From assembly GCA_904063045.1 (NCBI GenBank), contig CAJFCJ010000093.1:18629-63122 (forward strand): DNA of 44,494 nucleotides, read 5' to 3'. A program made the translations under genes and the position numbers. Source of the DNA: Dimorphilus gyrociliatus (taxonomy: Eukaryota; Animalia; Annelida). This document shows, piece after piece, positions 1-35,699 of this stretch. The notes below the pieces were generated by a model. The model ran no database searches and was not told where the DNA came from. It saw only the letters and a list, made by a program, of their open reading frames with translations. Numbering within the stretch: position 1 is the stretch's first letter; each line of letters starts with the position of its first letter.

Positions 1-541
1 CCTCTAAGTTTTATTTAAGACATAATTTTTAAAATAAGCAGTATAATTGCTTTTGCTTTTTGTAAGTAATTCAAATATGAAAAAGAGAACACAGTTTTTT
101 AATGAACATTTCAGGTTTCACTTATTCAAAATGATAGATTAAATTATTCCTTTGAAATAAACTTTTTATTAACAATTTAGACAGTGAAAATGTAGCTGAT
201 TTTATGCCATCAAACAAAATTTCAAGACAAAAGGGCCAGGAAGGTTAGGGTTGAGCAGTGTATTTTGTGATGTTTTTTGTTAGGCAAACACTTATAGATG
301 AAAAAGAAAAAAGATAAAAGTTTCATTTCGAAAAATTATTAAGAGGAGTCAAATTTCATTGTATAAATGCATGAATAAGAAGAAAAATACAGTTTTAAAT
401 ATAAATGTGATAGATTAATTATGTATTTATTATGATGTCTTCATTTTTTTAATCAAAAATTTTATCATTCTCTTTCTGTAAGTAATCATTAATTTTTTTC
501 AATATGTGATTTTTGTATTAAAGATACCAAAGATCAGCATT

Positions 542-1439
542 TTAACGTTTTGACAGTATAATTGTAAATGTGATATCTGGATAGGTTTCCTCACAACATG
601 CATATTGTTTCACATTACGTCTACCAGTATTTTTAATAATTCTATATTTTCCATAGTATTCACTAAAGTCAATATTTTTCATATCATTATAAAAGTTTAC
701 ATCTATCTGATTTCCGTGATAAGTCCATGAAGCATATTTGAAATTGCAATGATATTCTCCTCTTTTCTTATCCAGTGGACATCTTACCTTTGAAAAATAG
801 ATGGAATGTAGATGATAAAAGACATTATAACCTCTTCTAACATACCGTTATTAGTTTTGGAGAAATGTACAAAATGTTTCCATTGTGTTTGACAATTGCA
901 AGAACATCGGCAAGATTAATATCTTTACGTGCCCTAGTAAAACATAAACAACAATATATGAGAATTTTTTGATTATAGGATAATGATCTATTACTGATTG
1001 TATAGAATAATATCAGGACTCCAAATCATATTGATTGGTACATGTAGAGATGTAACTTTGTAATCTTCAACAGACCAACGTAATCTAAAGTCCTCCCAGG
1101 ACTATAATTTTCATAAATATTACTGATATTTTGACCTAATTTCTTATTTACAAATTAATATTTTACCATTCTTTGCCAAACATTAAAAGTTATAAGTTCA
1201 CCATCAACTTCAGTGACATCAGTTAAACTTAATCCTAAAGAAACATTACCATTTTGAAAAGAGGAAACATAGCGTTTTCCAAATAAATCATTAATTAATC
1301 TGGTATTATCTTCATATTTCCTAGAAAACAAATTTGCAATGCAGGAAAAGATAAAAGAAGAAAAAAGAAGAGAAACTTACACTGTATAGGATAATTGTAG
1401 AAGCATGGAAATAAAAATTGATAAGAGTAGTACTCTCAT
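542..1439 (-). CDS. Secreted acetylcholine-binding-protein (AChBP)-like protein: soluble nAChR-type ligand-binding domain, 217 aa, 5 exons
   Basis: Exons 1439-1381, 1320-1167, 1101-995, 933-846 and 787-542; GT-AG introns of 60, 65, 61 and 58 bp; frame continuous (654 nt). Protein: MRVLLLSIFISMLLQLSYTVKYEDNTRLINDLFGKRYVSSFQNGNVSLGLSLTDVTEVDGELITFNVWQRMSWEDFRLRWSVEDYKVTSLHVPINMIWSPDIILYNQARKDINLADVLAIVKHNGNILYISPKLITVRCPLDKKRGEYHCNFKYASWTYHGNQIDVNFYNDMKNIDFSEYYGKYRIIKNTGRRNVKQYACCEETYPDITFTIILSKR*. It has a signal peptide, the WxPDI motif, loop B SWTY and loop C YxCCxxxY, and stops where TM1 would begin. Confidence 0.88.
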
Positions 1440-2469
1440 TCTGAAAATATTGTCTCTTCCAAATTATTAGTAAAAGATGAAAATTCAGTTTATATGCTTG
1501 AATGTGAAACAAGAATAAATGTGATGATTGGATAATTAATCATTGACAAACTAGTGAATGAACTATTAACTATTAATATAACTATTTATAGCTATTTGAT
1601 TAACAATTATGAATAAAACTCGAATTATGTAGACTGTAGAGTAGTAAGTGAATAACTTTAATAATCATTACTAATCACTCATTTATTCCATTAACAATAA
1701 TTATTCTTGTATACCTATTTTATTGATAAATAAAATTCTGGTAAGCCCACACATTTCATAAAATTCCTTAGCTAAAATACAGATTTAGACAACTTATCAG
1801 ATGCCGAATTAAGAGAATTTCAAGATGTTAAACATGTCAACAGTGCAAAAATTCACTTCTACAAGTTAACACATGCTTTAATACATCTCTGCAATCATGT
1901 TATCAGTTATAAAGAGTGCATTTCTAGTCATCCAAACCAAAGAATATCCATTATGTAGGGGATTTATTCCAGAATATGTGCTTATCAAAACATATGTAGA
2001 CGAATTTAGATTTACAGTTTTTAGAAATCATAAAATACAGACTAAGATTTATTTTAAAGGAAAAATTTGTGATAAAAAATATTTATTATCTATAAAACAA
2101 ACAACAGAATTCTATTCTCTTTTTTTTCATCTTTGAAAAGAAGGAATTTCTAGATGTTGAAAGAATTCTAAATTGCTAAAATTCAAAGAAATCATGAATA
2201 AGATTTTTTCAAGTTAGTTCCATACAATAACATAAATTATTGATTTTTTTTAATAATAAAATTAATTTTCTAATCATTACATTTATTCAAGTTTGACATT
2301 CAATTATATTACATTCCATACCAAAAAAATTTCAAATTTTGTGTTTTTTTTTGCAAGAAATCTTTGCAAAATTTTATTAATTTTTTAATAAACACTGTAA
2401 ATTTTGATAAGAAAAAGAAATTGTCAAAAAAGCAAAATATACTTTTAAATTAATGAAAACTGGCATTGT

Positions 2470-2635
2470 TTTGTCTTTAATTTCTACCAAAAATTACATT
2501 TTTTAAGACTATTTGGGAATAAACTTTAAAGGTTCTATTTGTGTGAGTACTTTGGCAAATTGGTCAATGATTGCAAAAGATGAATACTATTTTAAAGAAG
2601 CAAAACTTTCTACAATTACAATACAGTAAAGTACA
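2470..2635 (+). repeat. Unclassified dispersed repeat family A, copy 1
   Basis: Shares ...aaactttaaaggttctattt...tactttggcaaattggt.aatgatt...ctacaattacaataca..aaagtaca with 4298-4462 and with reverse copies at ~17208-17270, 29988-30040, 31154-31171 and 43738-43846. Confidence 0.8.
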
Positions 2636-2888: not shown

Positions 2889-3240
2889 AATAGCTGGTTT
2901 TTCCACAGGGTTCACACTGCATTATGCAAAAGTAAGTCAAAGATAAAACATTCAAAAAATTATTTAGGGCTAAGTTAAGATCAGGATAAAATACTCAAAG
3001 AGAGAGAGAAACAGTTCAATATGTAAATGTCTTATTTTAATTATGGGAAATCTTTGGAAAATTTACCTCGAATTAATGTAAATTATTATGGAATAATAAT
3101 AATGCTGTGGCTCGTAGTTTTTGTAATTCATTGTATTTCTTGAATACAAGCTCCCTATTGTCTTTACTCCACGTCATATTTAAAAAAGTATAATGAAAAT
3201 AAAGTAATATAATTGAAATTAACAATTAATTGAATAAGAT

Positions 3241-3330
3241 AACTTAGAAAAAAAATGTTTTTTTGCAACATCTATTTAAATGCCAAACTGGATGTCAAGT
3301 GACTGTTCCAATAATTATGGAGTGTGGCCA
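3241..3330 (-). mobile_element. Tc1-like 5' subterminal relic
   Basis: 3271-3300 matches 41735-41764 at 29/30; the latter lies upstream of the Tc1 transposase start at 41626. It is followed by a Tc1-TIR-like ctgttccaataattatggag. Confidence 0.5.
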
Positions 3331-4297
3331 AATAAAGAAAAAATTGATGAAAATGACCAAAAATATTTTGCTTATAATATTCATAAATATTATCATTTTG
3401 TCAATTTTTTTTCAATATTACGTAAATATAACCTTTTTTTTATAGAAATTTAGACCAAAAAAAATAATTTACAAGGATAAAACAATTTTAACTATTAATT
3501 AAAAGTTGGCCAGAACTCTGATTGAAAATGTACACATACATTCGTCAGCTATATTCTACAATAGAGAAGTAGTATTGAACCAGTATTGTACTATGAGATA
3601 GCACTGATAAAGATAAGCAGTAGTGACCTAGTTTCGCATAGGGCAGTGCATACACATTATGCAGTAATAAAACCTATTGAATTATATAAAGAATATTTGC
3701 TATTTGCAACCTAGCATTAATATTACAATTTATTAATCCATAAATTTATGATTTCGAACTAAAACTAGTTCAATTAATTATCAATTATGCTTAAATTCTA
3801 AGGTTAGATTATATTCACTATTCAACAGTATTGTATACACAATACTGTTCTTTTTAACATGCATTAATCAGATATACTTCCTCTGCATATGCTGATGCTA
3901 AATTTACTAACTCAATCAATTGAATATCATTATTAAGGTAGAATATAAAAACGGTCAAATATACAATCTACATGTTTTCTTGATTGTTGGACTTGTCCTA
4001 CTAAAATTGTTACATCTTATGCAACTCTCCAACCTTCGAAATTCAACTATTATTTAGAAGAGGAAAACAATAAAAACATGACCATATTTAGAACTTTTCT
4101 TTGTCTTCAAATGTTACTTTTGTTTTTGTGAACATTGAAATATGTGAACTATCAACCCTTAAAAGAGTATATAAACCCTACGAAATTAACAGTTGATAGT
4201 TCAGTTTTCTAACCGTCAGCTAGTTGTTTAAACTAGCTTGTTTAGAACTAGAAGCTCATTTTACTCAATACATATTCTTTGGACGAAATACTGGTGT

Positions 4298-4462: not shown

Positions 4463-6665
4463 GAAAATGGCCAAAAACCTAGTTTTATATAGATACTAAT
4501 AAAAATAAATGTTAAAAAAAAAACTTAGATGCTACTTATTGTTTTATTTAATGATGTAGATATTTTTAGTATTTAATTATATTATTTTTAACTGCTCAAA
4601 ACCTTCACATAATTAAATGTTTGTGAGTGATAATGTCACAACTAAAATAATATACCAGTTTTCTTTTGTAAAATGTATATTTCACTGAAACTATTTCTGT
4701 TTGAAACCATTAGGTAACATTATATAAATTTGATAATTTAAACATGTATAATGGCCATATTAGAGGGTTATTTATTTTATATTTAAAAAGAACTAATTTT
4801 GTTCTTGTCATCATTTTTTTTCAGAAAATTTTTGATTGCATTTCCACAGAAAGTTCTACTTTATATCAGACCACTTTCAAAATGCCTCCTTCTTGCTATT
4901 CTTGCCAAAGAAAAGTATATAAAAAATATGAATGCATATGCAGTCTATGCAAGAAAATATTTCACTTGAAATGTTTAAGAGGTAAGACTTGATTAGTTTT
5001 TTTAAACTTTTAAAAGTTGTGTTTTAGATGGTTTTTGCTCAATGTGCACAACAATCAACAAACATCAATTAAAAGTTGTTTTGAACAAACATGATGACAT
5101 CTCCATTCTTTTTCAACAACCAGAAGTTGAAAAAAACACTGCAATGGAGGTGGACAACCAAGCTTGCGCTTCTGATAAAATAATGGGAGAAGAGAGTATG
5201 ACAGAAAATGTTGTTACTGCATTTCAATTGGAAGAAGAAATACAAACTAGTCATTGTGAAATCCTAAATTCTGTTCTGGAGAATGAAAATATGATGGAAG
5301 TTGATCATGAAGAGGAATGTATGACAACTGATATAGTACAAGAAGATGTTAATAATGGATTTAATGCTCAAAATCATATAGAAAGCTCTTTTGAAGACAT
5401 AATGGATTAAGCAAATTTAGATGATGATGGAGCATTTAAAATTTTCAAGAATGGAAGCCAAAAAGGATAACCATTAATGATTCACAATGGCTTTTCATAT
5501 ACAATAAAAGGACATGGAGAGCACTTCAGAATATGGAGATGTAGTGTCCTGTGGTTTTTAGATGGAACTTTCAAAGTTGTAAATCCTCCCTTCAAACAGC
5601 TGTTTTCCATTCACTCATTCCTGAAAAAAGATGGTGTGCTTAAACAAGTTCCTCTTCTTTTTGCAATGACAACATCAAAAAAGAAAGTCTGTTATTCTCT
5701 TTTATTTAAGTTATACTTTAAATACTATTTTGAAAAAAGTCTACAAATATTTCTTCAAGCTGTAAAAGAATTGATTCCTGACAAATCACCAAAGAAAATA
5801 TTGGTAGATTCTGAAAGAGCAGTTTGGAAGAATTTACAAAAGCATTATCCAGATGCCGAAGTAAAAGGCTGTCTCTTTCACTGGACTCAAGTACATAATT
5901 TTTTTGTGTTTAATATTTTCTTAAAAAACTAATTTTCTTTTGGATTTTGTAGGAATTGGGTTATTCTGCTAAATATAAAAGCCATGTGGACAATGGACTG
6001 AAATGAAAAAGCTATTGGCAGTACCATTCTTACCTGCTGATGTTATTCCAAATGAATTTCATAAAATAAAACAACATTTGAAAGCAATCCAGAAATTGGA
6101 GGATCTTGTTAACTATATTGAGGCTACTTGGATTGAAGATAGTCTGTGGACACCATCATCTTGGTCAGCATATGAATCTCCTATCAGAACAAATAATGAT
6201 GTTGAGGGATTCCACAATAGATTGAATATAAATATGGGCAACTCCAAATCTTTTTACAATCTGATAGATGAGCTGAAAAGAGAGGCTGATCTCATTCCAA
6301 TATATCAACAGCTGCTTTCTGAAAAGAAATTGAAGAGATTACAGAAAAAAATCTATTTAAATGTCCAAAAAGAAATATTTGATACTTGGGAGAAATTTAA
6401 AAATGGTGAAATAACAGCAGCTCAGATTTTGGAAAATTGTTCAAAAATATATTTGTCACATTAGATATGCTACAGTTCTTAGTTCAAGTTGTTACTTTTA
6501 GTAGTTTCTCTTTTTTATATTTGTTTTAATGTTGTTTCATTTTCATTAAATATATATCTTCAAACTATTCTTATCATTTAGAATAATCAATATTATTATT
6601 TATTTATAATTATAATTTTTTATATAAAACTAGGTCTTTGGCCATTTTCAATCCTGGCCGTTTTC
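4463..6665 (+). mobile_element. Mutator-like (MULE, Phantom-type) DNA transposon #1, defective
   Basis: TIR gaaaatggccaaaaacctagttttatata (4463-4491) versus tatataaaactaggtctttggccattttc (6621-6649), with an extra subrepeat to ~6665; internal MULE transposase. No clear TSD. Confidence 0.8.
4882..6464 (+). pseudogene. PHD-FLYWCH-MULE transposase pseudogene with introns
   Basis: Spliced N-terminus MPPSCYSCQ...CSLCKKIFHLKCLR|DGFCSMC (C4HC3; intron 4982-5027). FLYWCH start GFSYTIK...WRCS is fused directly to WFLDGTFK (internal deletion); then [15 protein letters not shown] and RTNNDVEGFHNRLN. In-frame stop at 5410. Confidence 0.85.
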
Positions 6666-7507: not shown

Positions 7508-10264
7508 GGGAGCAGGTGAAACCGTACCTGGGTTAAACCATACCCACTAGAGGGTTAAACCATACCCACTAGAGGGTTAAACCGTACCCAGGTGAAACCG
7601 TACCCAGCTTAAACTGTACCCATAAAGGGGTTAAACCGTACCCATTTTTTATTTAATATACTGTATATGTTTATTAAACTTGTGATAATGAAATCTATGT
7701 TATACTGATACAATGTATATAGGCAAATATATAAACATACATTTATCTAAAAACTTAAAAGAATTAAAAATGAAAAGAAATAGAGAATATGAAATGAAGG
7801 TAAAATCTATGGAGCATATATATGAGATGTTTGTAGCAATAATTCATCTGCTAATATTATTCCTAATTTGTATTCATCCCAAATGTCAAATATTTTTTTT
7901 TCTCTCTCCACATACCTTTTTCTCTGATATCTATATATTTGTTTATCAGACATCACCTTTTCATAGATAATCATCAAATCTCCCTCTTTTTTCAGTTCAT
8001 CCACTAATATGTAGAACGAGCCTTTTGATTGCATTTGACTATTCATCCTGTTGTGCCAACCCTCCAGACTATTATTTGTTCTAATTGATAGACCAAACAC
8101 TGACCAATTTTCAGGTTTCCACATAGAATTACATATCCATGTATTTTCAAAATACAACAGTAGGTCAGAAAATTTCTGTTGTTCCAAAAGTTCAGACTTG
8201 AGTCTGCCAAATGTTGAAATGATGATATCAGATGGCAGAAATGGTAATGCTATGATTTTCCTTAGATCTCTCCATTCTTCTCCTTTCTCCATATATTATT
8301 TGGAATATCCAAGAGACTGAGAATAACAAATTAATTATGAAATAAGATATTGATTTAAATATTAGATCTACCTGTATTTTCCTATAAATTGCTTGGGTGA
8401 AATGAAAAACACATCCATGTATTGTTGTATTTGGAAACACTTTTGTTATTGTCTTCCATAGTGCCATCTCAAAGTCTAAAGTGACTTTTTCAGGCTCTCA
8501 CATGTTAATCATTTTCTTAATAGTCTACAGAAAATTATTTAACATTTAACAAACTGAAAATATAATTGGTTATTACACTTACTTTAAATGCTAATTTATA
8601 AGCTCTCTTGTGTTTTGATGTCATGAAAATGAAGGCAAGGGGCACATGTTTCATGTTCCCATTCTTTTTCACATAACATTGGATTGTCAGTAATTGGTAA
8701 AATGGTTCTTTTACAATTTTAAATGTTCCATCAACAAACCAATGATCTGATTTACTCAACAATTCAAACTGATAGTCTGTGCCAAGTATAAGAATTGTTT
8801 CATTGTTTTCACAGATATCTTTCTTTAGAAAGTTGTCTGGTATGAAATCCATATTTAATTCAAAATCATAATCTTTTGGTTCCATTGACCTCTTCTTTTG
8901 CCTGGTTGAATTCGTCATCCTTTTTAAATATTGCAGGTTTGGTAGAAAATCAGTATTTTCCTGGTTATTAAGAAGAACTATTTCAGCCAGCTTTCTTCCA
9001 CTTGTAGCAAAATCTTTTTGGCATAAGTTTTTCAGTTCCCTTTTTATTTCAACATCAACTTTTCGATACTTTTTTCCTTCATGATTATGCTGTTGACTTC
9101 CTTTAACAAAGATACTGCCTTGTTGATGAATTCTTGCTGGATATCTTTTTTTATTAGTTCTTACACTACATACCCATATGCTACTTTTTGAATTTTTTGT
9201 TTTCAGAGTGAAATAAAACTCATTATTAATTAGTAAATCTTTACCAATCTGACTTCCCCCTTTTACTACATAAAATTCATCCATCCTTCCAGTCACATTA
9301 CTCTCTTCTAGATCTTGATCTTCATTTCTACAAATAAGGGCAGGCTGTTCAGTGTCTTGATTTTGACTTCTTTCATTAATGTGACTTTCTTCTATATGCT
9401 GATGTTCATTTGCACTATTAATGACACTCTCATCCATATCTATGTGTTGATCTATCTGCATAATTTCCCTGTTAATAATATCATTATCATCATCTTTCAA
9501 TCTTTTAACCTGCAGAAGAAACTGCTTCTTTTCACAGTCCAGACAAACTGATACCTTTGAATCTAGAAGACAAAAGTTAAGTAGTTACAAATTAAGATGT
9601 GCATTTAAATATCATACTCAGTAAACATTTTTCATGGATTTTTTCATTCCATAGCACACAAAGTTTCCATTTCTGTCTCCCATATATAATAAGTTTGCAA
9701 TTTTTACATTTCATTTTTAATCTGGATCTGTTATACATAAAACATTAGTTTTGTGTAATAAAAATTTCATAAAGCAGTTAAGGGAAATCAATATTTAAAA
9801 ATATTTAAACCTATTACTTAATGCCATATAATAATACACAAGATGATAGACAATTATTATTTCACTATTTACTTTAATAAACTTTTTTTCAAAGTTATGA
9901 AAAAGGGCTATTATCATCAATAATAATTCGTTTACCTTTGTTTTATTTTGGATAGATTCCCAAAATAATATTTAACTGAGAATTCTGTAAAATCAATATC
10001 AGAAATAAATCAAAATGGCTGACTTAAAATGAGTACCAATATTAAAAACTGGTATTCTAAGTAACAGAATATTATGGAATTAATTTAATAATTTACACAC
10101 ACATATATATATATATATATACAGTATATATAATATTATTCAAAATAATACATTTGTTAATATATGTTAATTATTTTAAAGTTGGTATGGTTTAACCCCT
10201 TTATGGGTATGGTTTAACCCTCTAGTGGGTATGGTTTAACCCAGGTACGGTTTCACCCCTATTC
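7508..10264 (-). mobile_element. Mutator-like (Phantom, foldback-type TIR) transposon #2, full length with both TIRs and TSD
   Basis: TIRs are tandem arrays of GGT(G/T)AAACC(G/A)TACC at 7508-7644 and inverted at ~10183-10264. Flanks aaattttt (7500-7507) and aaattttc (10265-10272) form an 8-bp TSD with one mismatch. Confidence 0.88.
7807..9714 (-). pseudogene. PHD-FLYWCH-MULE transposase pseudogene (spliced, nonsense mutations)
   Basis: MKCKNC...CVLWNEKIHEKCLL|NSKVSVCLDC (intron 9563-9617), FLYWCH (FYFTLKTK...WVCS...HNH), WFVDGTFK, DFEMALW, GCVFHFTQA, RTNNSLEGWHNRMN. Premature TGA and TAA codons in the spliced frame, and one PHD Cys changed to Trp. Confidence 0.85.
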
Positions 10265-14229: not shown

Positions 14230-14690
14230 AACACTGATACAATTGATACAGAATTATAGGAAACAGAATTTAAATGTGAAAATTTCTATGAAATATTTTA
14301 CAAAGGATTTAAAAAGATTATAATACAAGGAGAACTTGAAATGGGAAAAAGTGTAAATGTTAAATCTTCTTACAAATGGGCAAATAACCTATGAAAAGTT
14401 GATTCTCAGAAATTATGCATTTACGTCACTTCGAACAAGTTAAAAAAGATACAAGCATCTATCAAGAGATCATTGACTAAAATTTTGAAAATATTCCTCC
14501 AAAGACTAAAAATATAGCAGAAACAATTTTTGTTGAAAAGAGAAATGATGTGAAAAGCTTATGATTAAAATAGAGACACATATCTACTAATTTTGAAGAC
14601 CTTTTTAATATGGTGACTTCAATATACTGACATGTCATTGATCTACACTCTGTAAACAGTATTAGATATGATTACATGTGTTTTCAACAA
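14230..14690 (+). pseudogene. NACHT/STAND NTPase (NLR-like) N-terminal relic
   Basis: FYEIFYKGFKKIIIQGELEMGKSVNVKSSYKWANNL (Walker A at 14314-14352, followed by the typical ..WA), with multiple stops; Walker B not found. Confidence 0.6.
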
Positions 14691-14761
14691 ATCATTATTT
14701 CTTATAATATTCATGAATTTTTATTTATAATTCTCTGTTTGTTAAATTTTTTTTCAAATAT

Positions 14762-16934
14762 TTAAATTATTTCACATAATGAAATCATATTTATATCTTT
14801 TGAATTGATAAAAATATATATTGGAAAATAATCTTCCAATTGGATGGCGTGATTCATAATTGGACATTGAAATGTATAAATTTGAAATAAATTATTATTA
14901 ATGATACTTTTTAATGGGCACATCTGAAAAAACTCAGATTTTCCACCATTTTGTTTAATAGGATGAAGAAAATTAATTGTTGCATTTCCAACAGTTTTCT
15001 TATTTTTTTTAATGATAATTTTTAAAAAAAAATTTTCATTTACAATTCCATTATTTAAAAAGCTTAGATTAATAACAGTTGTTGTTTTTTTAAATTTATT
15101 ACAAGTGTTTAAAAATTTATCAATGACACTGTAGTTTTTTTGGCAATTTTCCAAATTTGATGTAGTTATCTTCTTTCCATCTAAAGTAAGAAAAATCAGA
15201 AAAAAGTTTAAAAATTATATTTCTCAAACCTAAATCCAAAATTTGAAAATGATTGACAACATCATTTCCATTATTTTTTAGCATGATTTGAGTGAAATTA
15301 TTTAGTATATTATCGGCTTTTACAATAGCCAAAGTATTTCTTCCATAGACATTTCCAGAACCAAAATATATTTTGCCATTCAAAATTTCCAACCAAAATT
15401 CATTCCATTTTTCACATGCAATCAATGATTTTGGCAATTTGAACTTGTTTATAGACAAGCTTTCACTCCGAAATGCAATTACTAGATTTTCCACATTATT
15501 GCCCATATCAATCTGCATTGAGAATTGTATTGATGACTCATTTTTAAAACTGATGATAAGTGATGAACAATTATTCAAGTTTTGGTGTTTTTGACCTTTA
15601 ACTTTAAATGTTATTGCTCTAAAATTATTTTGATATTTTCTTGGAATGTAATAGATGACATAATCTTCTGCTTGAATTGAATACATTTGGCTAAAATTTT
15701 CTAGAAAAAAAATAAATGAAAAACAAAAAAACTTATTGAATATTTTTTTTACTTTTAGCAAAAACTTGAATAGTAGCAAGTCCAAGATTATTTCCAATAT
15801 GATAATCTTTTATAGTTAATGTAAATCCACTTTCAATAGTCGGATAATTAGCATAATTGAAATAATGTCGAAATCCATTATTAGGTAAAGTTATATTTTC
15901 AGTATATTGTGAAGACCATTGTATTTCCAGTATTTTTAAATAATTATCTTTTCTGTAGAATTTAAGAAAAAGAGAAACAGAGTTAAAAGAAATAACATGT
16001 AATATAGGCTGCAATTTTTTTGTAAAATTTTTATTACACATTTGCCAAACAAATTTTTTCTGGTTCTGTTGTTCTTGTGAATGTAACACTTATATATTGG
16101 CCAACACAGTTAATGATAGATGGACAATCAGCTTTCCAATATGTATTAAATGTCCAATCTAATGCATTTTTACATTCGTTCAGTGGAATTGATGATGAAC
16201 TAGAACAAGTTGCTCCCATTTCCTGTTGAGCAATATTTTCATAATCTTCATATTCCAATGAGTCCTGATCTATTTTTTTGTACAATTTAGTTTATACATT
16301 TTTCAATAAAGAAAAATATAGAAAATAACAAACCATTGTTGTAAGCAAGAGCAGAAATATAACCAATTCCTATATTCGGTATTACACTCCTAGACTCTGC
16401 AAGACTAAGACGGATACTGGATGATTTTGAACCAAAATCTTCATCCAATAAAAGGCAAGTTTGTATATCATTTAATAAATATGTTTTATTTTGATTGTCC
16501 ATTCGAATAGTAAGTTTATTTATTCTGTTGGTTGCCTTAATAATTCTCTGATATACGCAAATCTCTACAATATCATATTGTTTTTGGAAAGTAATATTAA
16601 TCCATTGTAAATGACATGGGTCAGGATCACATTTAGCAACCCAATCATTTATATTCACCCAGAAAGGATCCATTATATTTTCGCGATGGAAATTAAGTAA
16701 TACATTGCTTGCATGATCATTTGAAGATGTACAAGTTGCATTATTCATTTTGCCAGCAACGTTAATTAGCTTTCCATCTATTCAAAAGGAAATAGCAAAA
16801 TTTCAACAATACAAATAAAATAAAATAAACACAGAAAACAAACTTGCAAACTTTTCTCCAGATGTAAATATTCTATTTGAAAAGAAAATTTCCAAAATGA
16901 CAATAGAAAATATCATTGTTAGTTTAAACATCAT
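14762..16934 (-). CDS. Secreted multidomain protein, ~618 aa, 6 exons: signal peptide, two discoidin/F5-8C-like domains, FAMeT (Methyltransf_FA)-like domain, unknown C-terminal domain
   Basis: Exons 16934-16844, 16777-16334, 16269-16038, 15952-15753, 15700-15230 and 15180-14762 total 1857 nt in frame, joining five ORFs of the track; introns 66, 64, 85, 52 and 49 bp. Motifs: LINVAGKMNNATCTSS...LQWINITF, ATCSSSS...NALDWTFNTYW...YISVTF and CEKWNEFWLEILNGKIYFGSG. Confidence 0.75.
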
Positions 16935-17304
16935 GTTGACAAATTGTCTGCCAGAGAAGGGATAGTGCATGGAATATATAAACAAGTAAAGAAGAAAAAT
17001 CATTGAGAATTAATCTTGTAAATTGATATATTGTTGCTCTTTTTTGATATTTTTTTTAATACTCAAAAGATTAATCAGAAAGCCAGTTGTTTTCCATTAG
17101 AACACAATGTATTTTATGAAAAGAAAAGAAAGAGTTCAATGATTCATTTCTCATTTTTACAAATGTAAAAATCTACTTGGCTAATAAATTTTGTATTTAT
17201 CCTGTATCAATCATTTACCAATTTGCCAAAGTGCTGGTTCAAATAGATCCTCAAGTTTCTCCACAAAATACTAATCTTTAGCATGAATTCACTTATACCA
17301 ATGT

Positions 17305-17500
17305 AAGCCCTGGTTCAAAAGTTATTGGGACTTTAGTTGTGTCATGGTATGGATGACAGTATAAAGCAGAGAGTAATTATTCAATTTCTTGTATCACAAC
17401 AAGTTATTGCAATCAATATTCATAAGCAATTGAAAGCTGTTTTTGCTAGTACAACAATTAGTGAAGATTCAGTAAGAAAGTGGGTTAGATAATTTTATTA
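17305..17500 (+). mobile_element. Mariner 5' relic (HTH N-terminus)
   Basis: MDDSIKQRVIIQFLVSQQVIAINIHKQLKAVF...SEDSVRKWVR*; homologous to ~27005-27090. Confidence 0.7.
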
Positions 17501-17724
17501 GAAATACAAGCCATTCAGTTGTTGAAGGTTTGATTGAAAGTCTTGGATTGAAAAAGATGGATTCCCTACCAACTTTGAATTAAGTAACAAAAAATATATT
17601 ACTTTTCCCTTCAATAAACTTTCAATTGATTCTGTCTAGCCATTACAAATTTATTTTGGTGTAAGCAAACACAAGTCATGTCCACATGTTCCATTCATTG
17701 AAATATCATTACATTTTTGGTGCA

Positions 17725-17904
17725 TGAGAAGATCTCTCCAAAGAAAATTTATATATGGTTAAAGAGCTATTTTGGGGATGAAATTATTGAGTGAATGTTC
17801 TATAAGAAGGTGGGTATCTGACTTAAAAAAGGAAAGAAAAATTTATCTGTCTGTAGTATTCTCTTTACAAATTCAACAAAGACAGAAAATGATAAATTTT
17901 TTAT
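17725..17904 (+). mobile_element. Second mariner-like HTH relic
   Basis: KISPKKIYIWLKSYFGDE...SECSIRRWVSDLKKG, with a frameshift. Confidence 0.5.
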
Positions 17905-17924
17905 TTGTTCAGTTTTGGAATATA

Positions 17925-19574
17925 CAGTACGGGTAACCTATTTTTGAACGCCCAGCTATTTTCTATAATAGTTAAAATATTTTTTCTATAACATTAATTT
18001 TACAATCGAATAATTAGACATGGCAATTATCTCTTTGTACACAACAGATTCAACTAGTTAAATTTTTAAATTTCACTGTTTAAATAACAAAAAAAATTTT
18101 ATTCTGAAAATGTCACAAAAAGTGGCCGATATCCTATTTTTGAACTTTATGAATTCTGATAAAAATGTTGTTAGAAAAGGTAAGAAATATGTTTATTTTT
18201 ACATTTTATTAACGTATAGATTATATTACTTCAAATAATCACTTTTTCTTTTTCTTTAATATCTTATATTATATCCTTTATTTTTCCGACATAATCTGGC
18301 TCTTTTATGGAAGCTTTTGTATAAATTTGCAATATACCAATTTGGTATGTTATTAAATTCCTCTTCTACTGCCCTCCACAAATCATCTTTTGTCTGCAAA
18401 ACATGGGTTTGCAACCTATTTTTTAAGTAAGCCCACAAATTTTCAATAATGTTCAATTCTGGGCTTCTGGATGGCCAGTCTTGTAAAACTGTTATATTGT
18501 TTCTCTCAAGAAATGTCCTTGTAGATGCCGATTTATGACATTTGGCACCATCCTGCATAAGCACATTGTCTGGCTCAAACATTGGAAATAGCTTCTCCTC
18601 AAGTATTTCTTGGTATAAATTGCTGTCCATATACCCATTATATAACTTTATAGCTCTTGTCCCATCAGCTTTTATACACCCCCATATTGATATTGATGAA
18701 TTTGCTGTTCGAACAGCTTTTTTGGTGTATTTTGGATCATACCGTTTATGACTCCCCCTATGGACCCAAATTCTCCTTTTTGGATACAATTCAATCCGAC
18801 TTTCATCGGAAAGTATAATTTTGTTTACATCTTCTTGACTCTTATTTAACATAGACAAACAAAAAGATTTTCTATTTCTTGCATGGCAAGGTTTTAGCGC
18901 TGGCTTACTTGTTGCAACATAGCCTTTAAGGTCGTTTTTTTTTGCAAAATCTTTTTGCATGTCGATAGAGAAATTTTGGAACCTAATCCTGAATGTTCAA
19001 GCACATTCCTTGCCATTAGAAATGGATTTCTCTTTGAAATTTGGCAAATTTTTCTCTCTTCCCTTTCTGTTAAAATCTTTGGGGTACATAGTTTCGATAG
19101 ATTGTTAATAGTTCCATGTTTCTCAAATTTTTTTGTTATGTAGTGGACAGATCCCTTTGAAATTTTTAATTGTTTTGCAATTTCGTTCATTGACATCTTC
19201 TCCTTCCTCTTTTCCAACACTAATTTTCTCATGTCCAAGCTTATTTTTGGCATTTTTAACTTTTTTAAAATTGTTATTCTACTTTCATTCTTGACATAAA
19301 TTGTCATGTGGGAAAGCAAAAAATTTTGGTCATTTTCGTAAATTTTTAATTATTGTTCAAAAATAGGATATCGGGTACTTTTCACGATTTTTTCATAATA
19401 AAAATTTTTTGTTATTTAAACAGTAAAATACAAAGATTTAATTAATTGAATATGTTGATTACAAAGTCACAATTGCCATGTCTAATTGTTGGATTGTAAA
19501 ATTAATGTTAAAGAAAAAATATTTTAACTAATATAGAAAAAAGCTGGGCGTTCAAAAATAGGTTACCCGTACTG
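17925..19574 (-). mobile_element. Full-length Tc1-family transposon (1650 bp) with ~220-bp IR/DR-type TIRs and TA TSD
   Basis: TA|CAGTACGGGTAACC at 17923-17938 and GGTTACCCGTACTG|TA at 19561-19576. TIRs span 17925-18145 and 19355-19574, each with two copies of cctatttttgaac (outer 17937-17949, inner 18133-18145). Confidence 0.93.
18256..19253 (-). pseudogene. Tc1 transposase (DD35E spacing) with a single frameshift in an A9 run
   Basis: HTH ORF MPKISLDMRK... plus catalytic ORF with LSDESR, MQDGAKCH and SPELNIIENLW (35 aa between D and E). The two frames join if the A9 run at ~18935-18943 were A10. Confidence 0.85.
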
Positions 19575-24309: not shown

Positions 24310-25867
24310 ATAGGAATATATATATATTGCTTGTGTAAAATGGAATACACATCCATGAATTTGTGATTCTGGGTATATTTTGGATACAGCTCTCCACAGA
24401 CCCATCTCAAAATCAATTGTTATCTTCTCAGGCTGTGACATGCCAGTCAGGTTTCTGACACTCTGAAGAATGAAACATTCATCTGAAAGTAGTTAAAGAA
24501 TGAATTTCTCAAAATGATACCTTAAATGCTTTTTTATAACTCTTTCTTTTCTTTGATGTCATAAAAATAATCTTTTCCCACTGGAACTTGTGTCAGTTTT
24601 ACAAATATCTTTCAAATCTTTTCTGATTCTGATGTCACTGGTTAGGTGGTTATTTTTACCATGAATATGTTCTAAACTTCCCTTGATGAATGTTTTTCCT
24701 TGCTGGCGAATTCTTGCAGGGCATCTTTGTTTTTTGGTCCTCTTACTGCACACCCAAATGATACTTTTTGAAGTTTTAGCTTTTACAGTGAATGAAAATC
24801 CATCATTTATCAGAATATCTTTTCCCATTTGACTTCCACCTTTAACTATTTGAAAGTTGTCATGGATAAGTTCCTGCAAGTGTTCAATGTTTCCATTGTT
24901 CAATATTCCATTGTCATTCACATTTGCATCCATCACACCTTCATTTGCATCTACAACCACATCTTCATTTAAATTTTCATCCATTTCATTTCCATTCATC
25001 TGACAGTTATCAAAATTGCCACCATCACAAAACTCTGGCTCATTTGAAACTTGGTGACTTTCTCCATCTTCATTTTGAAGATTAGTTGAATTTTGTAATT
25101 TTCCATCAACATCACCAGTTTCTACAATTTGATCTTCTGGTCTCTTCATCTGAAGAAGGAATCTGTTTTTTTCACAATCCAGACAAACTGACACCTTAGA
25201 ATCTGATTGAAATAGCTGAATATTTATAAATGCCATATTGAATATAGAATCATACTTATGACACATTTTTGATGAATAATTTCATTGCAGAGCACACAAG
25301 ACATTTTCTTCTGTCTTTCATATACAAAAAGCTTACAATTCTTACATTTGACTGTCATGTTTTATGAATAATTCTCTATGCCAGACTGAAAATATTAAAT
25401 GTAATTAGTGAATAAATAAAAAATAATATTATTGAACACATCTAGAAAACAAGAATAATATTTTGATTTGAAATGAGTATTGGAAAGGTATACTTACAAT
25501 TATTCAAAATGGCTGAAAAATATTTTTCAAATAAATTGGATTTTTTCACAAAATTAAAAAACATGTATTGAAAATATGAATAAAACATTAATCTAGATTA
25601 CAATGCACATGAAATTACCTCTGTTACATCTAAAATGATAATCTTTGCCCAAATATAATTATCAAAAAAGGCTTGAGTTTCAAATTAAATTCTTTCCAAA
25701 GTGAAAGTTAACTTCAGTTTCTTCATTTTTAAAATGGCTGTCAGTTTATATTTCAACAGTGTTTCTATTTTTGTAGCTTCCATTATTATAATTCTAAATA
25801 ATAACATTAAAAAAATGTAATATTTTTATGGGTACGGTTTCACCCAGGTACGGTTTCACCCGCTACC
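24310..25867 (-). mobile_element. MULE #3 (same TIR family as #2), internally deleted and 3'-truncated, left-arm copy
   Basis: TIR units ggtacggtttcacc at 25830-25867; intact spliced PHD MTVKCKNC...CVLCNEIIHQKCVI|NSKVSVCLDC; FLYWCH; then DFEMGLW...GCVFHFTQA; the DGTFK region is missing. Confidence 0.85.
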
Positions 25868-28022: not shown

Positions 28023-29548
28023 TTACATTATATTTGTTATTTGATAATAGCATATTGACATATTGTCTTCAGTTCTTCCAAAGCCTTTAATATAAACAGC
28101 TTGACAATAATCTTTTCCACAATTACAAGAATATGTGCAAGATTGACTATCTTCTACATCAATCAATTCACAGCTATAGTACTGCCCAAGAAATCCTGGT
28201 TCAATTTGTAAATCTTTTGGGATGTAAGCTATTATTCCAGAGTTTGATAAACCTTGCTTGACATCAACACAATTTTGTAAATTTTCCCCTTTTATTAGTA
28301 TTTTGAAATTTTTCATTTTGGAATCAACAGTTGGCCAAGGAATTCTTAAATTAAAAGTTTCATTAGCATATACATTGATGCAAGTTGGGGCATTTTTGTC
28401 ATCCATTATCTTCTTCAACTTGTCATTTTGTGTACTTTTTATATCATCAAAGATTGGTCCATTAGTACAGGAATGAATGATAAGAGACTGACGATTACTT
28501 GCAGAATTGTAATCACAACTGTCTGACATAGAATTAATTATATTGCATTGCTGTTCTCTATAATCAGGGGTATAATTAATCATATCACAATTTGATTGGT
28601 GACTGCAAAGATTTTTACAATCTTTTATACTTTTGACTGTGTATTGTCCAATTGGTCCACATTTGACTTGAAAACAGGTTTGAGATTTCTGAGCAAGTCT
28701 GTGATAAGTCACTTTATCCATAAGATTTTCTTGATCAATTTCTCTGCAAAAATCTAATGATAAAATGCATACAGTTGACGAAAGATTGTACTGGAAACAA
28801 CTGCAATTTAAAATTGATAAACATTCTCTTGAACATTCTTTCAATTCAACTGCACTGAGTACCAACACTTTTGAAGGTAAATCAGTCAGTCTAGTAACTT
28901 TTATAAACCCAGGTATAAAAGTATTGTCATAGTAACATTTGCCATTAACAAAGCAACAACCGTACGCTTCACAATTCTGCTGAGTAGTCATAGAAGATCC
29001 ACATAAAGTTTCTGTAACATTTTCACATTGTCCTACATTGAGTACAGGATCTGTTTAAAAAAATATCATCATTTCAAGTTTTGTTACAAGTTGCAGGTAG
29101 CCTTACCACAAACTCCATTTTTTCGTCCAACATAATTATATCCATTCTTTGGAGAAAATCTCCTGGGTTTTGAATGGCGGTCATGTTTATTCAAATGACA
29201 AATTGAAGAATTTTGAAAGTATTCAATTGACCTGAAAAAGATTTTTTTCCATGATATCTAAATTTTTGATCAAATATTTCAAATGTTAAATTGCTGACTT
29301 GCAATTTGAATATTCAATACATTTCAATTTACATTCTTCCAGTGATAGAGTTCCTACATATATGTTATTGTTGTCAATTTTAAAATTGTAAAACGTTTCA
29401 GTGAAGCAAACTGTATTTGAAAGAGAAAATTTAGAGTGAAACTGATTGGTTAATTGGCTAAAAATTTACTATTTGATCTTGACAATACATTTTCCAATTC
29501 ATTTTCCATCAGAAAGATGAATAGACAATGATATTGCAAACTAAACAT
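28023..29548 (-). CDS. Secreted Cys-rich protein, ~447 aa, 4 exons: PAN/apple, trefoil(P-type)-like, two PAN/apple, unknown C-terminal domain
   Basis: Exons 29548-29470, 29410-29299, 29231-29107 and 29050-28023 total 1344 nt in frame; introns 59, 67 and 56 bp. Motifs: SLEECKLKCIEYSNCKSIEY...ICHLN; CGSSMTTQQNCEAYGCCFVNGKCYY; ECSRECLSILNCSCFQY; DCKNLCSHQSNCDMINY. Confidence 0.78.
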
Positions 29549-34141: not shown

Positions 34142-35699
34142 GGTAGCGGGTGAAACCGTACCTGGGTGAAACCGTACCCATAAAAATATTACATTTTTTT
34201 AATGTTATTATTTAGAATTATAATAATGGAAGCTACAAAAATAGAAACACTGTTGAAATATAAACTGACAGCCATTTTAAAAATGAAGAAACTGAAGTTA
34301 ACTTTCACTTTGGAAAGAATTTAATTTGAAACTCAAGCCTTTTTTGATAATTATATTTGGGCAAAGATTATCATTTTAGATGTAACAGAGGTAATTTCAT
34401 GTGCATTGTAATCTAGATTAATGTTTTATTCATATTTTCAATACATGTTTTTTAATTTTGTGAAAAAATCCAATTTATTTGAAAAATATTTTTCAGCCAT
34501 TTTGAATAATTGTAAGTATACCTTTCCAATACTCATTTCAAATCAAAATATTATTCTTGTTTTCTAGATGTGTTCAATAATATTATTTTTTATTTATTCA
34601 CTAATTACATTTAATATTTTCAGTCTGGCATAGAGAATTATTCATAAAACATGACAGTCAAATGTAAGAATTGTAAGCTTTTTGTATATGAAAGACAGAA
34701 GAAAATGTCTTGTGTGCTCTGCAATGAAATTATTCATCAAAAATGTGTCATAAGTATGATTCTATATTCAATATGGCATTTATAAATATTCAGCTATTTC
34801 AATCAGATTCTAAGGTGTCAGTTTGTCTGGATTGTGAAAAAAACAGATTCCTTCTTCAGATGAAGAGACCAGAAGATCAAATTGTAGAAACTGGTGATGT
34901 TGATGGAAAATTACAAAATTCAACTAATCTTCAAAATGAAGATGGAGAAAGTCACCAAGTTTCAAATGAGCCAGAGTTTTGTGATGGTGGCAATTTTGAT
35001 AACTGTCAGATGAATGGAAATGAAATGGATGAAAATTTAAATGAAGATGTGGTTGTAGATGCAAATGAAGGTGTGATGGATGCAAATGTGAATGACAATG
35101 GAATATTGAACAATGGAAACATTGAACACTTGCAGGAACTTATCCATGACAACTTTCAAATAGTTAAAGGTGGAAGTCAAATGGGAAAAGATATTCTGAT
35201 AAATGATGGATTTTCATTCACTGTAAAAGCTAAAACTTCAAAAAGTATCATTTGGGTGTGCAGTAAGAGGACCAAAAAACAAAGATGCCCTGCAAGAATT
35301 CGCCAGCAAGGAAAAACATTCATCAAGGGAAGTTTAGAACATATTCATGGTAAAAATAACCACCTAACCAGTGACATCAGAATCAGAAAAGATTTGAAAG
35401 ATATTTGTAAAACTGACACAAGTTCCAGTGGGAAAAGATTATTTTTATGACATCAAAGAAAAGAAAGAGTTATAAAAAAGCATTTAAGGTATCATTTTGA
35501 GAAATTCATTCTTTAACTACTTTCAGATGAATGTTTCATTCTTCAGAGTGTCAGAAACCTGACTGGCATGTCACAGCCTGAGAAGATAACAATTGATTTT
35601 GAGATGGGTCTGTGGAGAGCTGTATCCAAAATATACCCAGAATCACAAATTCATGGATGTGTATTCCATTTTACACAAGCAATATATATATATTCCTAT
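34142..35699 (+). mobile_element. MULE #3, right-arm copy
   Basis: Mirror of 24310-25867; ATG at 34651. Confidence 0.85.

What the first reader, a model, noticed from the sequence alone, without database searches (positions are those of the whole stretch)
542..1439. Hidden intact AChBP-like gene: a soluble nicotinic ligand-binding domain with an unusually short Cys-loop
Seen: five small exons, none recovered in the coding frame by the ORF track, splice in frame to a 217-aa protein. It has a signal peptide and residues matching all five aromatic-box positions of alpha-type nAChRs (loop D W68, loop A Y105, loop B W157, loop C Y198 and Y205) plus the vicinal C200-C201, and it stops right after the last beta strand, with no TM1-4. 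Known: this is the architecture of molluscan and annelid AChBPs (secreted pentamers that bind ACh and nicotinic toxins); nAChRs have a C-x13-C Cys-loop and Lymnaea AChBP has C-x12-C. Here it is C-x10-C (CPLDKKRGEYHC). Inference: a divergent secreted ACh or neurotoxin sink, possibly an independent truncation of an alpha subunit.
Basis: partly seen in the sequence, partly recalled or inferred. Interest (0 to 1): 0.85.

Follow-up and report, generated by a model that had tools for sequence, protein, structure and literature searches.

The report
Annelid acetylcholine-binding-protein-like gene, already annotated
This is a real, spliced gene of the tiny marine worm Dimorphilus gyrociliatus that encodes a secreted, channel-less copy of the nicotinic receptor's ligand-binding domain (an AChBP-type protein); it is already in the public annotation and belongs to a family of at least eight such genes, so it is a new member of a known kind, not a hidden novelty.

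Summary
On the minus strand, five exons (1439-1381, 1320-1167, 1101-995, 933-846, 787-542) join through four GT-AG introns of 58-65 nt into a 217-aa protein. It has W68, Y105, W157, Y198, C200-C201, Y205 and a C139-x10-C150 Cys-loop. The genome is Dimorphilus gyrociliatus (annelid). The protein is identical to the public prediction DgyrCDS14871, so it is not hidden. Pfam finds a full-length Neur_chan_LBD and no membrane domain. An AlphaFold model (pLDDT 94.8) superposes on Aplysia AChBP (TM 0.87-0.89). One public run holds a contig spliced exactly across intron 3, and another contig colinear through the TAA. At least seven other intact LBD-only paralogs all stop at the same place. The short Cys-loop is not unusual. 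All 24 rows with a membrane domain have C-x13-C with an FPFD-type motif. LBD-only relatives have hydrophilic loops of 8-18 residues, or no cysteines. In trees the worm genes sit in one clade (85-89% bootstrap) with other LBD-only proteins, including mollusc AChBP relatives. A separate origin is disfavoured but not rejected (AU p 0.07). Pentamer formation and ligand are untested. Verdict: new member of a known kind, moderate-to-low interest.

The parts
1489..1494 (-). TATAAA box 50-55 nt upstream of the ATG, conserved in the 92%-identical paralogs
   Evidence: Read. Conserved in the alignment. Function inferred, not tested.
1381..1439 (-). Exon 1: ATG and hydrophobic N-terminus MRVLLLSIFISMLLQLSYT-V (probable signal peptide). 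Ends in phase 2.
   Evidence: Same model in the public annotation. Signal peptide inferred from sequence only.
1321..1380 (-). Intron 1, 60 nt, GT..AG
1167..1320 (-). Exon 2: N-terminal helix, N45-V-S glycosylation sequon, beta1-beta2, loop D W68
   Evidence: Contigs of run X1 end exactly at 1167 and carry 3 further letters that do not lie on the stretch.
1102..1166 (-). Intron 2, 65 nt, GT..AG
995..1101 (-). Exon 3: SWEDFRLRW ... IWSPDIILYNQ (loop A, Y105)
   Evidence: This exon alone hits Pfam PF02931 at 1.8e-9. It is joined to exon 4 in a spliced contig.
934..994 (-). Intron 3, 61 nt, GT..AG. Its removal is seen directly in a public run.
   Evidence: joint 932->994 skips 61 nt, ends CT..AC on + (GT..AG on -), depth 170.
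846..933 (-). Exon 4: beta5-beta6 (loop E region)
788..845 (-). Intron 4, 58 nt, GT..AG
542..787 (-). Exon 5: Cys-loop C139-x10-C150, loop B W157, loop C Y198-C200-C201-Y205, last strand TFTIILSKR, stop TAA 544-542
   Evidence: Pfam PF02931 4.5e-10 on this exon alone. A contig covering 32-610 is colinear through the stop.
426..431 (-). AATAAA polyadenylation signal 111-116 nt after the stop, conserved in paralogs
   Evidence: Read and the alignment. Inferred.

Best explanation
Window 542-1439 (minus strand) is an intact, transcribed five-exon gene of the annelid Dimorphilus gyrociliatus, publicly predicted as DgyrCDS14871. It encodes a 217-aa secreted protein made only of the extracellular ligand-binding domain of a nicotinic-type pentameric channel, which is the AChBP type.

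Most likely mechanism:
- The N-terminal signal peptide sends it into the secretory pathway.
- The beta-sandwich domains assemble into a soluble homopentamer.
- Each subunit interface forms an aromatic cage: W157, Y105, Y198 and Y205 plus the C200-C201 disulfide on the principal face, and W68 on the complementary face. The cage binds a cationic amine such as acetylcholine, choline or a nicotinic toxin.
- With no channel, the protein can only buffer or sequester the ligand.

The short, charged Cys-loop (CPLDKKRGEYHC) follows from losing the channel. The loop no longer has to dock on the M2-M3 linker, so the hydrophobic FPFD motif and the fixed 13-residue length are gone.

The gene is one of at least 8 intact LBD-only paralogs, plus several fragments, produced by duplication inside this worm's lineage. 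Most lie on small transposon-rich contigs.

Shown: gene model, domain content, fold, conserved residues, one splice junction, the paralog family, and the stop position.
Inferred: secretion, pentamer, ligand, physiological role.

My odds: LBD-only soluble protein about 0.85-0.9; functional pentamer binding a cholinergic-type ligand about 0.6.
For: - Gene model: 5 exons in frame with 4 GT-AG introns.
- Annotation: identical to public protein P0152 = DgyrCDS14871 on a 63,122-bp contig, which is this contig.
- Domain content: PF02931 at 119 bits over profile positions 3-213 of 216, no PF02932.
- No membrane domain nearby: a whole-genome six-frame search with PF02932 gives no hit on C93 or on any paralog contig (C66, C194, C49, C78, C145, C58, C117, C9).
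- Stop position: all eight paralogs stop 1-6 codons after the last strand, where receptors of the same genome run on into ...IRRKTLFY... and TM1 in the same exon.
- Cys-loop: all 24 rows with a membrane domain have C-x13-C with an FPFD-type motif. LBD-only proteins have x8-x18 without it.
- Solved relatives by sequence: human alpha4, alpha2, alpha7 and alpha9 extracellular domains at 1e-32 to 1e-28, and Aplysia AChBP at 1e-26 to 1e-23. The aromatic-box residues align.
- Fold: AlphaFold2 pLDDT 94.8, pTM 0.85. Foldseek finds Aplysia AChBP at TM 0.87/0.89 and rmsd 1.6 A.
- Expression: one run holds a contig spliced exactly over intron 3. It covers exons 2-4 but not the upstream DNA. Another contig is colinear across the TAA.
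- Constraint: dN/dS is 0.51 against the 87-88%-identical paralog P0151, with ORF and splice sites kept in both.
- Phylogeny: six worm paralogs form a starred clade (98/91-95). All LBD-only proteins, including Haliotis and Elysia AChBP relatives and a Capitella one, form a single clade at 85-89% bootstrap.
Against: - No binding, secretion or assembly data exist.
- Only one splice junction of four is seen directly. It comes from contigs of a single run whose library type is not on record. Exon 1 and most of exon 5 (611-787) are not covered there.
- About 4 kb immediately downstream (C93:~14650-18628) is withheld and could not be inspected for further exons.
- dN/dS of 0.51 is only moderate constraint.
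- By sequence score the protein is closer to vertebrate alpha subunits than to mollusc AChBPs.
- The soluble clade is not strongly supported, and fast-evolving rows may attract each other.
Confidence: 0.8

Rival explanations
1. It is the 5' part of an ordinary nicotinic receptor subunit gene. Its transmembrane exons would lie further downstream, in the 4 kb that could not be read, and be reached by a splice that removes the TAA.
For: C93:~14650-18628, which begins about 540 bp after the stop, reads N and was not inspected. Only contigs, not reads, were available, and contigs drop rare isoforms.
Against: - The stop is at the same place in eight paralogs on eight different contigs. None has a PF02932 hit nearby.
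- Receptors of this genome encode the end of the LBD and TM1 in one exon.
- The Cys-loop lacks the FPFD-type motif and the 13-residue length found in all 24 rows with a membrane domain.
- No consensus donor lies just before the TAA.
- A contig runs colinear from exon 5 through the TAA for 510 nt.
- The evidence-based public annotation ends the protein at the same residue.
Confidence: 0.03
2. It is a young duplicate drifting towards pseudogene status. It is still open and weakly transcribed, but makes no functional product.
For: - It lies on a small, transposon-rich unplaced contig.
- The family contains several broken copies: C155 with stops, plus C198, C279, C40 and C69.
- dN/dS against its closest paralog is 0.51, not strongly constrained.
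Against: - The ORF, all eight splice sites, the TATA box and the poly(A) signal are intact and shared with the paralog.
- All ligand-contact aromatics and both disulfides are kept.
- Nonsynonymous change is about half the synonymous rate.
- Contig depths of about 100-170 on exons 2-4 in the one run that holds it.
Confidence: 0.07
3. It is a soluble LBD-only protein whose job is not acetylcholine buffering. It could bind another small molecule or ion, as the mollusc ACCBPs regulate calcium carbonate, or act as a chemosensory or perireceptor carrier or a scavenger of environmental toxins.
For: - The biological role of AChBPs is unsettled even in molluscs, and an AChBP variant (ACCBP) acts in shell growth (PMC3423370).
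- The family has expanded and diverged fast in this worm (52% identity or less between most paralogs), a pattern more typical of environment-facing proteins.
- Lophotrochozoan nAChR-like proteins with non-cholinergic ligands are known (PMC10338036).
Against: The complete alpha-type aromatic box and the vicinal cysteines are exactly those that bind quaternary amines. No alternative ligand is indicated by any result here.
Confidence: 0.25

Closest known systems
Molluscan acetylcholine-binding proteins (Lymnaea, Aplysia, Bulinus, Biomphalaria AChBP; Haliotis/Pinctada ACCBP)
   Same: - A secreted-type protein of about 210-230 aa consisting only of the Neur_chan_LBD fold.
- The stop falls where TM1 would begin.
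- It has the aromatic box, the vicinal Cys pair and a hydrophilic Cys-loop without FPFD.
- The predicted fold superposes on Aplysia AChBP at TM 0.87-0.89 and rmsd 1.6 A.
- It groups in one clade with Haliotis and Elysia AChBP relatives.
   Different: - Only 26-28% identity to Aplysia AChBP in the structural alignments.
- The Cys-loop has 10 residues instead of 12.
- It comes from an annelid and belongs to a lineage-specific family of at least 8 genes.
- Pentamer formation and ligand binding are untested.
Capitella teleta AChBP (PDB 4AFG/4AFH/4B5D; McCormack et al. 2010, cited in PMC4569296 and PMC3423370)
   Same: An annelid soluble LBD-only protein. This shows that the kind already exists in annelids. 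Exon 5 matches it at 8e-9.
   Different: It is not an ortholog by any evidence here. The Capitella LBD-only protein that entered the tree (P0171) is a different paralog, lacks the Cys-loop cysteines, and does not pair specifically with the Dimorphilus genes.
Alpha-type nicotinic receptor subunits (human alpha4/alpha2/alpha7/alpha9; Dimorphilus receptors on C2, C6, C19)
   Same: These are the best sequence matches among solved structures (1e-32 to 1e-28). All loop A-D aromatics and the loop C Cys pair are shared. Its intron positions look shared with receptor genes of the same genome, judging from where the exon-by-exon matches split. That is an inference coordinates, not an alignment of gene structures.
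   Different: It has no TM1-TM4. The Cys-loop is 3 residues shorter and lacks the FPFD-type motif present in all 24 rows with a membrane domain. It falls outside all receptor clades in both trees.

Membership tests
AChBP (soluble acetylcholine-binding protein) family | Full-length Neur_chan_LBD (PF02931) beta-sandwich with N-terminal helix | tested here: met
   PF02931 at 2e-34 over profile positions 3-213 of 216. AF2 model pLDDT 94.8, with an N-terminal helix followed by a beta-sandwich (11 strand elements listed by DSSP). Foldseek TM 0.87-0.89 to Aplysia AChBP.
AChBP (soluble acetylcholine-binding protein) family | No transmembrane domain: the protein ends right after the last beta strand | tested here: met
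   TAA after ...TFTIILSKR. No PF02932 in the protein or on the contig. The same stop position in 8 paralogs. A contig is colinear through the stop. Caveat: 4 kb downstream is withheld.
AChBP (soluble acetylcholine-binding protein) family | Cleavable signal peptide and secretion | tested here: inconclusive
   The N-terminus MRVLLLSIFISMLLQLSYTV has the n-h-c layout of a signal peptide. No signal-peptide predictor or experiment was available.
AChBP (soluble acetylcholine-binding protein) family | Aromatic box (loop A Tyr, loop B Trp, two loop C Tyr, loop D Trp) and vicinal Cys pair in loop C | tested here: met
   Y105, W157, Y198, Y205, W68 and C200-C201 are present. The loop A, B and C residues match the corresponding residues of human alpha4 in the printed alignment, and W68 aligns with its loop D Trp. 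W157, Y198, C200, C201 and Y205 are invariant, and Y105 nearly so, among 11 LBD-only proteins.
AChBP (soluble acetylcholine-binding protein) family | Cys-loop disulfide kept, but the loop is hydrophilic, of variable length, and lacks the FPFD motif | tested here: met
   CPLDKKRGEYHC (x10). LBD-only relatives range x8-x18. All 24 rows with a membrane domain are x13 with an FPFD-type motif.
AChBP (soluble acetylcholine-binding protein) family | Homopentameric assembly | tested here: inconclusive
   The complex prediction gave no verdict. Assembly is inferred from homology only.
AChBP (soluble acetylcholine-binding protein) family | Binds acetylcholine and nicotinic ligands or toxins | not testable with these tools
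   Needs recombinant protein and binding assays.
AChBP (soluble acetylcholine-binding protein) family | Common descent with bona fide AChBPs rather than with a receptor subunit | tested here: inconclusive
   It falls in one clade with Haliotis and Elysia AChBP relatives and other LBD-only proteins, at 85/91 and 89/92 support. Holding the worm genes with the receptors costs 27.3 lnL, AU p 0.07, which is not rejected. Lymnaea, Aplysia and Capitella AChBP sequences themselves could not be put in the tree.
Nicotinic acetylcholine receptor subunit (pLGIC) | Neur_chan_memb domain (TM1-TM4) following the LBD | tested here: not met
Nicotinic acetylcholine receptor subunit (pLGIC) | 13-residue Cys-loop with the FPFD motif that couples to the M2-M3 linker | tested here: not met
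   x10, no FPFD.

The most novel reading that the evidence does not exclude
Dimorphilus, a miniature worm with a compacted genome that has lost many gene families, has nevertheless expanded LBD-only nicotinic-type proteins to eight or more fast-diverging secreted paralogs. These sit in transposon-rich, rapidly turning-over DNA. On this reading the family is not a synaptic acetylcholine buffer. It would be an environment-facing set of soluble 'decoy receptors' or carrier proteins, each tuned to a different cationic small molecule (dietary or microbial nicotinic toxins, or chemical cues). The shortened charged Cys-loop might then serve as a new surface for higher-order assembly.
Probability: 0.2. 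Interest if true: 0.55.

Novelty: new member of a known kind. Interest (0 to 1): 0.33.

Why it matters
AChBPs are the standard structural stand-ins for nicotinic receptors. According to the papers held here, they had been described in molluscs, one annelid (Capitella) and spiders (PMC4569296, PMC3423370).

This locus adds a second annelid, and not a single gene but a lineage-specific family of at least 8 LBD-only genes. No paper in the searched library names them as AChBPs.

The comparison made here also gives a clean rule. Every channel-bearing subunit keeps C-x13-C with an FPFD-type motif. Every true LBD-only protein has lost both features. That rule is useful for telling real soluble proteins from truncated gene predictions.

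The family offers naturally varied, probably soluble scaffolds with short Cys-loops for structural or ligand-screening work. It is an incremental finding, not a surprising one.

Tried and rejected
- Complex prediction with two copies of residues 21-217 returned 'no answer' (score 0.01). It is not used as evidence either way.
- The look-up of sequencing runs found only one run, of unrecorded library type and kept as contigs. Starts, ends, strand and expression level therefore could not be read. Exon 1 and positions 611-787 were not covered.
- Inspecting the DNA downstream for membrane exons failed for C93:~14650-18628, which reads N. The paralog loci and the whole-genome PF02932 search were used instead.
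- Lymnaea, Aplysia and Capitella AChBP sequences could not be put in the tree. Haliotis P0276 and Elysia P0287 served as proxies, because their best solved relatives are Aplysia and Lymnaea AChBP. Capitella P0171 turned out not to be the crystallised Ct-AChBP.
- PMC4780051 (McCormack 2010) is not held.
- The search of earlier findings gave nothing by place or by words.
- The bacterial promoter and terminator scan is irrelevant for a eukaryote and is ignored.
- A retrocopy origin was considered and rejected, because the gene keeps four introns.
- Contamination was considered and rejected. Base composition, intron size, 92%-identical paralogs on other contigs and a paralog on the 2.7-Mb contig C9 all fit the host genome.

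Full report
**1. The observation**

The region was read on both strands and the model rebuilt in a script. On the minus strand the exons are 1439-1381, 1320-1167, 1101-995, 933-846 and 787-542. They join through four GT..AG introns of 60, 65, 61 and 58 nt into 654 nt, giving 217 codons plus TAA.

The Cys-loop is C139-PLDKKRGEYH-C150, i.e. C-x10-C. The protein ends ...TFTIILSKR*.

Scanned alone, exon 3 and exon 5 each pass Pfam's Neur_chan_LBD threshold. The whole protein gives 119 bits over profile positions 3-213 of 216, with no Neur_chan_memb. The only inexact detail is that parts of exons 1, 2 and 5 do appear in frame in an ORF list cut at 20 aa.

**2. Where it comes from, and whether it was hidden**

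The window is contig C93:18629-63122 of a 77.9-Mb, 349-contig assembly. Protein searches name the organism: Dimorphilus gyrociliatus, a meiobenthic annelid.

P0152, on a 63,122-bp contig and named DgyrCDS14871 by NCBI and UniRef, is residue for residue the protein I spliced. The genome paper built its annotation from transcript evidence plus ab initio models (PMC7854359). The gene is therefore annotated but unnamed and uncharacterised. It is not hidden.

**3. Is it expressed, and does the message end at the TAA?**

Only one public run holds the stretch. It dates from 2017, its library type is not on record, and it is kept as contigs. Laid on window 1-2600 (2,600 letters, within the operators' limit), it shows the following:
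- A 197-nt contig joins 1100-994 to 932-843. It skips exactly the 61 nt of intron 3, with GT..AG ends on the minus strand, at depth 170.
- Contigs stop exactly at the exon 2 donor (1167) and carry 3 further letters that do not lie on the stretch.
- Depth is zero over 1306-2262, which holds intron 1, exon 1 and the upstream DNA. A DNA library would cover this, so the run behaves like RNA.
- A 579-nt contig is colinear with the genome from inside exon 5 (610) through the TAA to position 32.

So the gene is transcribed and spliced, and the form seen carries the stop codon.

Limits: the other three junctions are not seen directly, positions 611-787 and exon 1 are not covered, and contigs cannot show ends or rare isoforms.

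A TATAAA at 1494-1489 and an AATAAA at 431-426 are both conserved in the paralogs. They fit a compact transcription unit, but this is an inference.

**4. Could channel exons lie downstream?**

Within the window, the 541 nt after the stop contain nothing like TM1. The next 4 kb or so (C93:~14650-18628) is withheld and reads N. That is a real gap in the evidence. Four indirect arguments close most of it:
- A six-frame search of the whole genome with PF02932 finds 143 matches. None is on C93 or on any contig carrying a paralog.
- Every paralog stops at the same place: TIIMSKS*, TLKILKD*, FSFKMK*, LRFFKQRKNV*, INLKRRT*, IQLRRKV* and, for P0009, VTIAKN*.
- Receptors of this same genome run straight on in one exon...ITIRRKTLFYTVNLI....
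- The Cys-loop has lost what a channel needs (section 6).

**5. A gene family**

DNA and protein searches of the genome found these family members:
- Two nearly identical copies at 92% DNA identity on C66 and C194. These encode P0151 = DgyrCDS14710, 218 aa.
- P0003 = DgyrCDS14572 on C49.
- P0009 = DgyrCDS7794 on the 2.7-Mb contig C9.
- Intact genes on C78, C145, C58 and C117.
- Broken or partial copies on C155 (in-frame stops), C198, C279, C40, C69 and C229.

I modelled the C78, C145, C58 and C117 genes with a small script. The same script reproduces the annotated P0003 and P0151 exactly.

Between the window gene and P0151, dS is 0.12, dN is 0.061 and dN/dS is 0.51. All splice sites and the stop are kept. 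This indicates moderate purifying selection, not decay.

The window itself is transposon-rich, with MULE/FLYWCH and DDE_3 ORFs.

**6. The 'unusually short' Cys-loop**

In one alignment of 57 proteins, all 24 rows with a membrane domain have C-x13-C with an FPFD-type motif. These come from cnidarian to vertebrate and include the four Dimorphilus receptor ORFs and the annotated Dimorphilus receptor P0230.

LBD-only proteins have hydrophilic loops of 8 to 18 residues, or no cysteines at all (Capitella P0171). The worm paralogs have x8, x9, x10 and x12. The few 'LBD-only' database entries that keep x13 with the FPFD-type motif fall among the receptors in the tree. They are evidently truncated predictions.

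C-x10-C is therefore real but ordinary for this kind of protein. It is best read as relaxation after loss of the channel. Established knowledge of pLGIC gating holds that the Cys-loop FPFD docks on the M2-M3 linker.

**7. Fold and binding site**

AlphaFold2 with a 44-sequence alignment gives pLDDT 94.8 and pTM 0.85: an N-terminal helix followed by a beta-sandwich. Foldseek's best matches are the human alpha9 extracellular domain, alpha4beta2, alpha7-AChBP chimeras and many Aplysia AChBP chains (TM 0.87/0.89, rmsd 1.6 A, 26-28% identity).

By sequence, the best solved relatives are human alpha4, alpha2, alpha7 and alpha9 (1e-32 to 1e-28), followed by Aplysia AChBP (1e-26 to 1e-23). The loop A-D aromatics and the loop C Cys pair align. 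Among 11 LBD-only proteins W157, Y198, C200, C201 and Y205 are invariant, and Y105, C139 and C150 nearly so.

Pentamer formation was not established. The complex job gave no verdict and is listed only under Tried and rejected.

**8. Relationships**

Two maximum-likelihood trees were built (IQ-TREE, LG+C20 PMSF, 57 rows each).
- The window gene, P0151, P0003, the C78 and C145 genes and P0009 form a starred clade (98/91 and 98/95).
- All LBD-only proteins form one clade apart from every channel-bearing subunit, at 89/92 and 85/91 support. This clade holds the eight worm genes, Capitella P0171, a spider and a scallop protein, many marine metagenome and transcriptome proteins and, in the second tree, Haliotis P0276 and Elysia P0287.
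- The best solved relatives of P0276 and P0287 are Aplysia and Lymnaea AChBP.
- No Dimorphilus receptor is sister to the worm's soluble genes.

Forcing the worm's soluble genes to sit with the receptors, away from the other soluble proteins, costs 27.3 log-likelihood units. The AU test gives p 0.07, which is not a rejection.

A shared origin with other spiralian AChBP-type proteins, followed by duplication in this lineage, is therefore the favoured reading. Long-branch attraction among fast-evolving soluble proteins remains a caveat.

**9. Comparison with what is known, and novelty**

According to the papers held here, AChBPs are soluble homopentameric homologues of the nAChR ligand-binding domain. 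They are described in gastropods, in the annelid Capitella teleta and in spiders. Their physiological role is debated, and the ACCBP variants act in shell formation (PMC3423370; PMC4569296).

A 2023 study pulled Dimorphilus sequences into a 649-sequence nAChR tree without discussing soluble forms (PMC10338036). My searches found no paper naming AChBPs in Dimorphilus.

The locus meets the sequence-level defining features of the AChBP kind: LBD only, aromatic box, vicinal Cys, hydrophilic Cys-loop. Secretion, pentamer formation and binding are untested. It is a new member of a known kind. Two modest additions are a lineage-specific family of at least 8 genes in a compacted genome, and a clean Cys-loop rule separating soluble from channel-bearing proteins.

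**10. Verdict**

- Observation: confirmed.
- Interpretation: partly supported. The architecture is right. 'Hidden', 'unusual' and 'independent truncation' are not supported.
- Best explanation: an expressed gene for a secreted AChBP-type protein that most likely forms a soluble pentamer and sequesters a cholinergic-type ligand. Confidence is about 0.8 for the soluble LBD-only protein and about 0.6 for the binding function.
- Interest: 0.33.

Noticed in passing
window 5477-5932(+), 8535-9500(-), 18256-18960(-), 24559-25266(-), 34743-35450(+), 28023-28991(-): The contig is transposon-rich. It carries MULE transposase and FLYWCH zinc-finger ORFs; two of the 235-aa ORFs have identical scores on opposite strands. 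It also carries a DDE_3 (Tc1/mariner-type) transposase ORF and a 322-aa ORF with a PAN domain.
   Followed up: partly
window 2452-2635: A stretch of about 180 bp recurs at 81-86% identity in more than 30 places on many contigs of the genome. It looks like a short dispersed repeat such as a SINE or MITE.
   Followed up: no
G000:C93:~14650-18628 (just below window position 1): About 4 kb immediately downstream of the gene reads N (withheld). It could not be checked for further exons.
   Followed up: no
L004 (G000:C93:1-3234, + strand): Long open frames with a reverse-transcriptase-like YLDD motif suggest a retrotransposon at the start of the contig. Not checked against Pfam.
   Followed up: no
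L017 (G000:C9:2197800-2202200), positions 567-770 and 3057-3953: The paralog P0009 (DgyrCDS7794) lies on a 2.7-Mb contig. A second LBD-like last exon (…EYECCTEVYPNM…) lies about 2.3 kb away on the same strand, possibly a tandem neighbour.
   Followed up: partly
L002 (C194:36470-40494) and L003 (C66:101423-105447): These two copies of the P0151 gene differ at only 7 aligned columns of 1,680, flanks included. They are either haplotigs of one locus or a very recent segmental duplication.
   Followed up: partly
protein P0001 (Bursaphelenchus xylophilus, 7,691 aa): The top hit of the representative search is a giant nematode protein with 30 separate LBD-like stretches. It is either a fused prediction over a tandem array or a true multi-LBD protein.
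   Followed up: no
proteins P0005, P0006, P0019, P0023, P0040, P0047, P0164-P0167, P0182, P0196, P0209, P0217, P0275-P0280, P0288: Many unnamed LBD-only proteins of 205-290 aa from marine metagenomes and transcriptomes fall in the same clade. They have Cys-loops of 8-18 residues or none. This suggests AChBP-type proteins are far more widespread than the literature held here states.
   Followed up: partly
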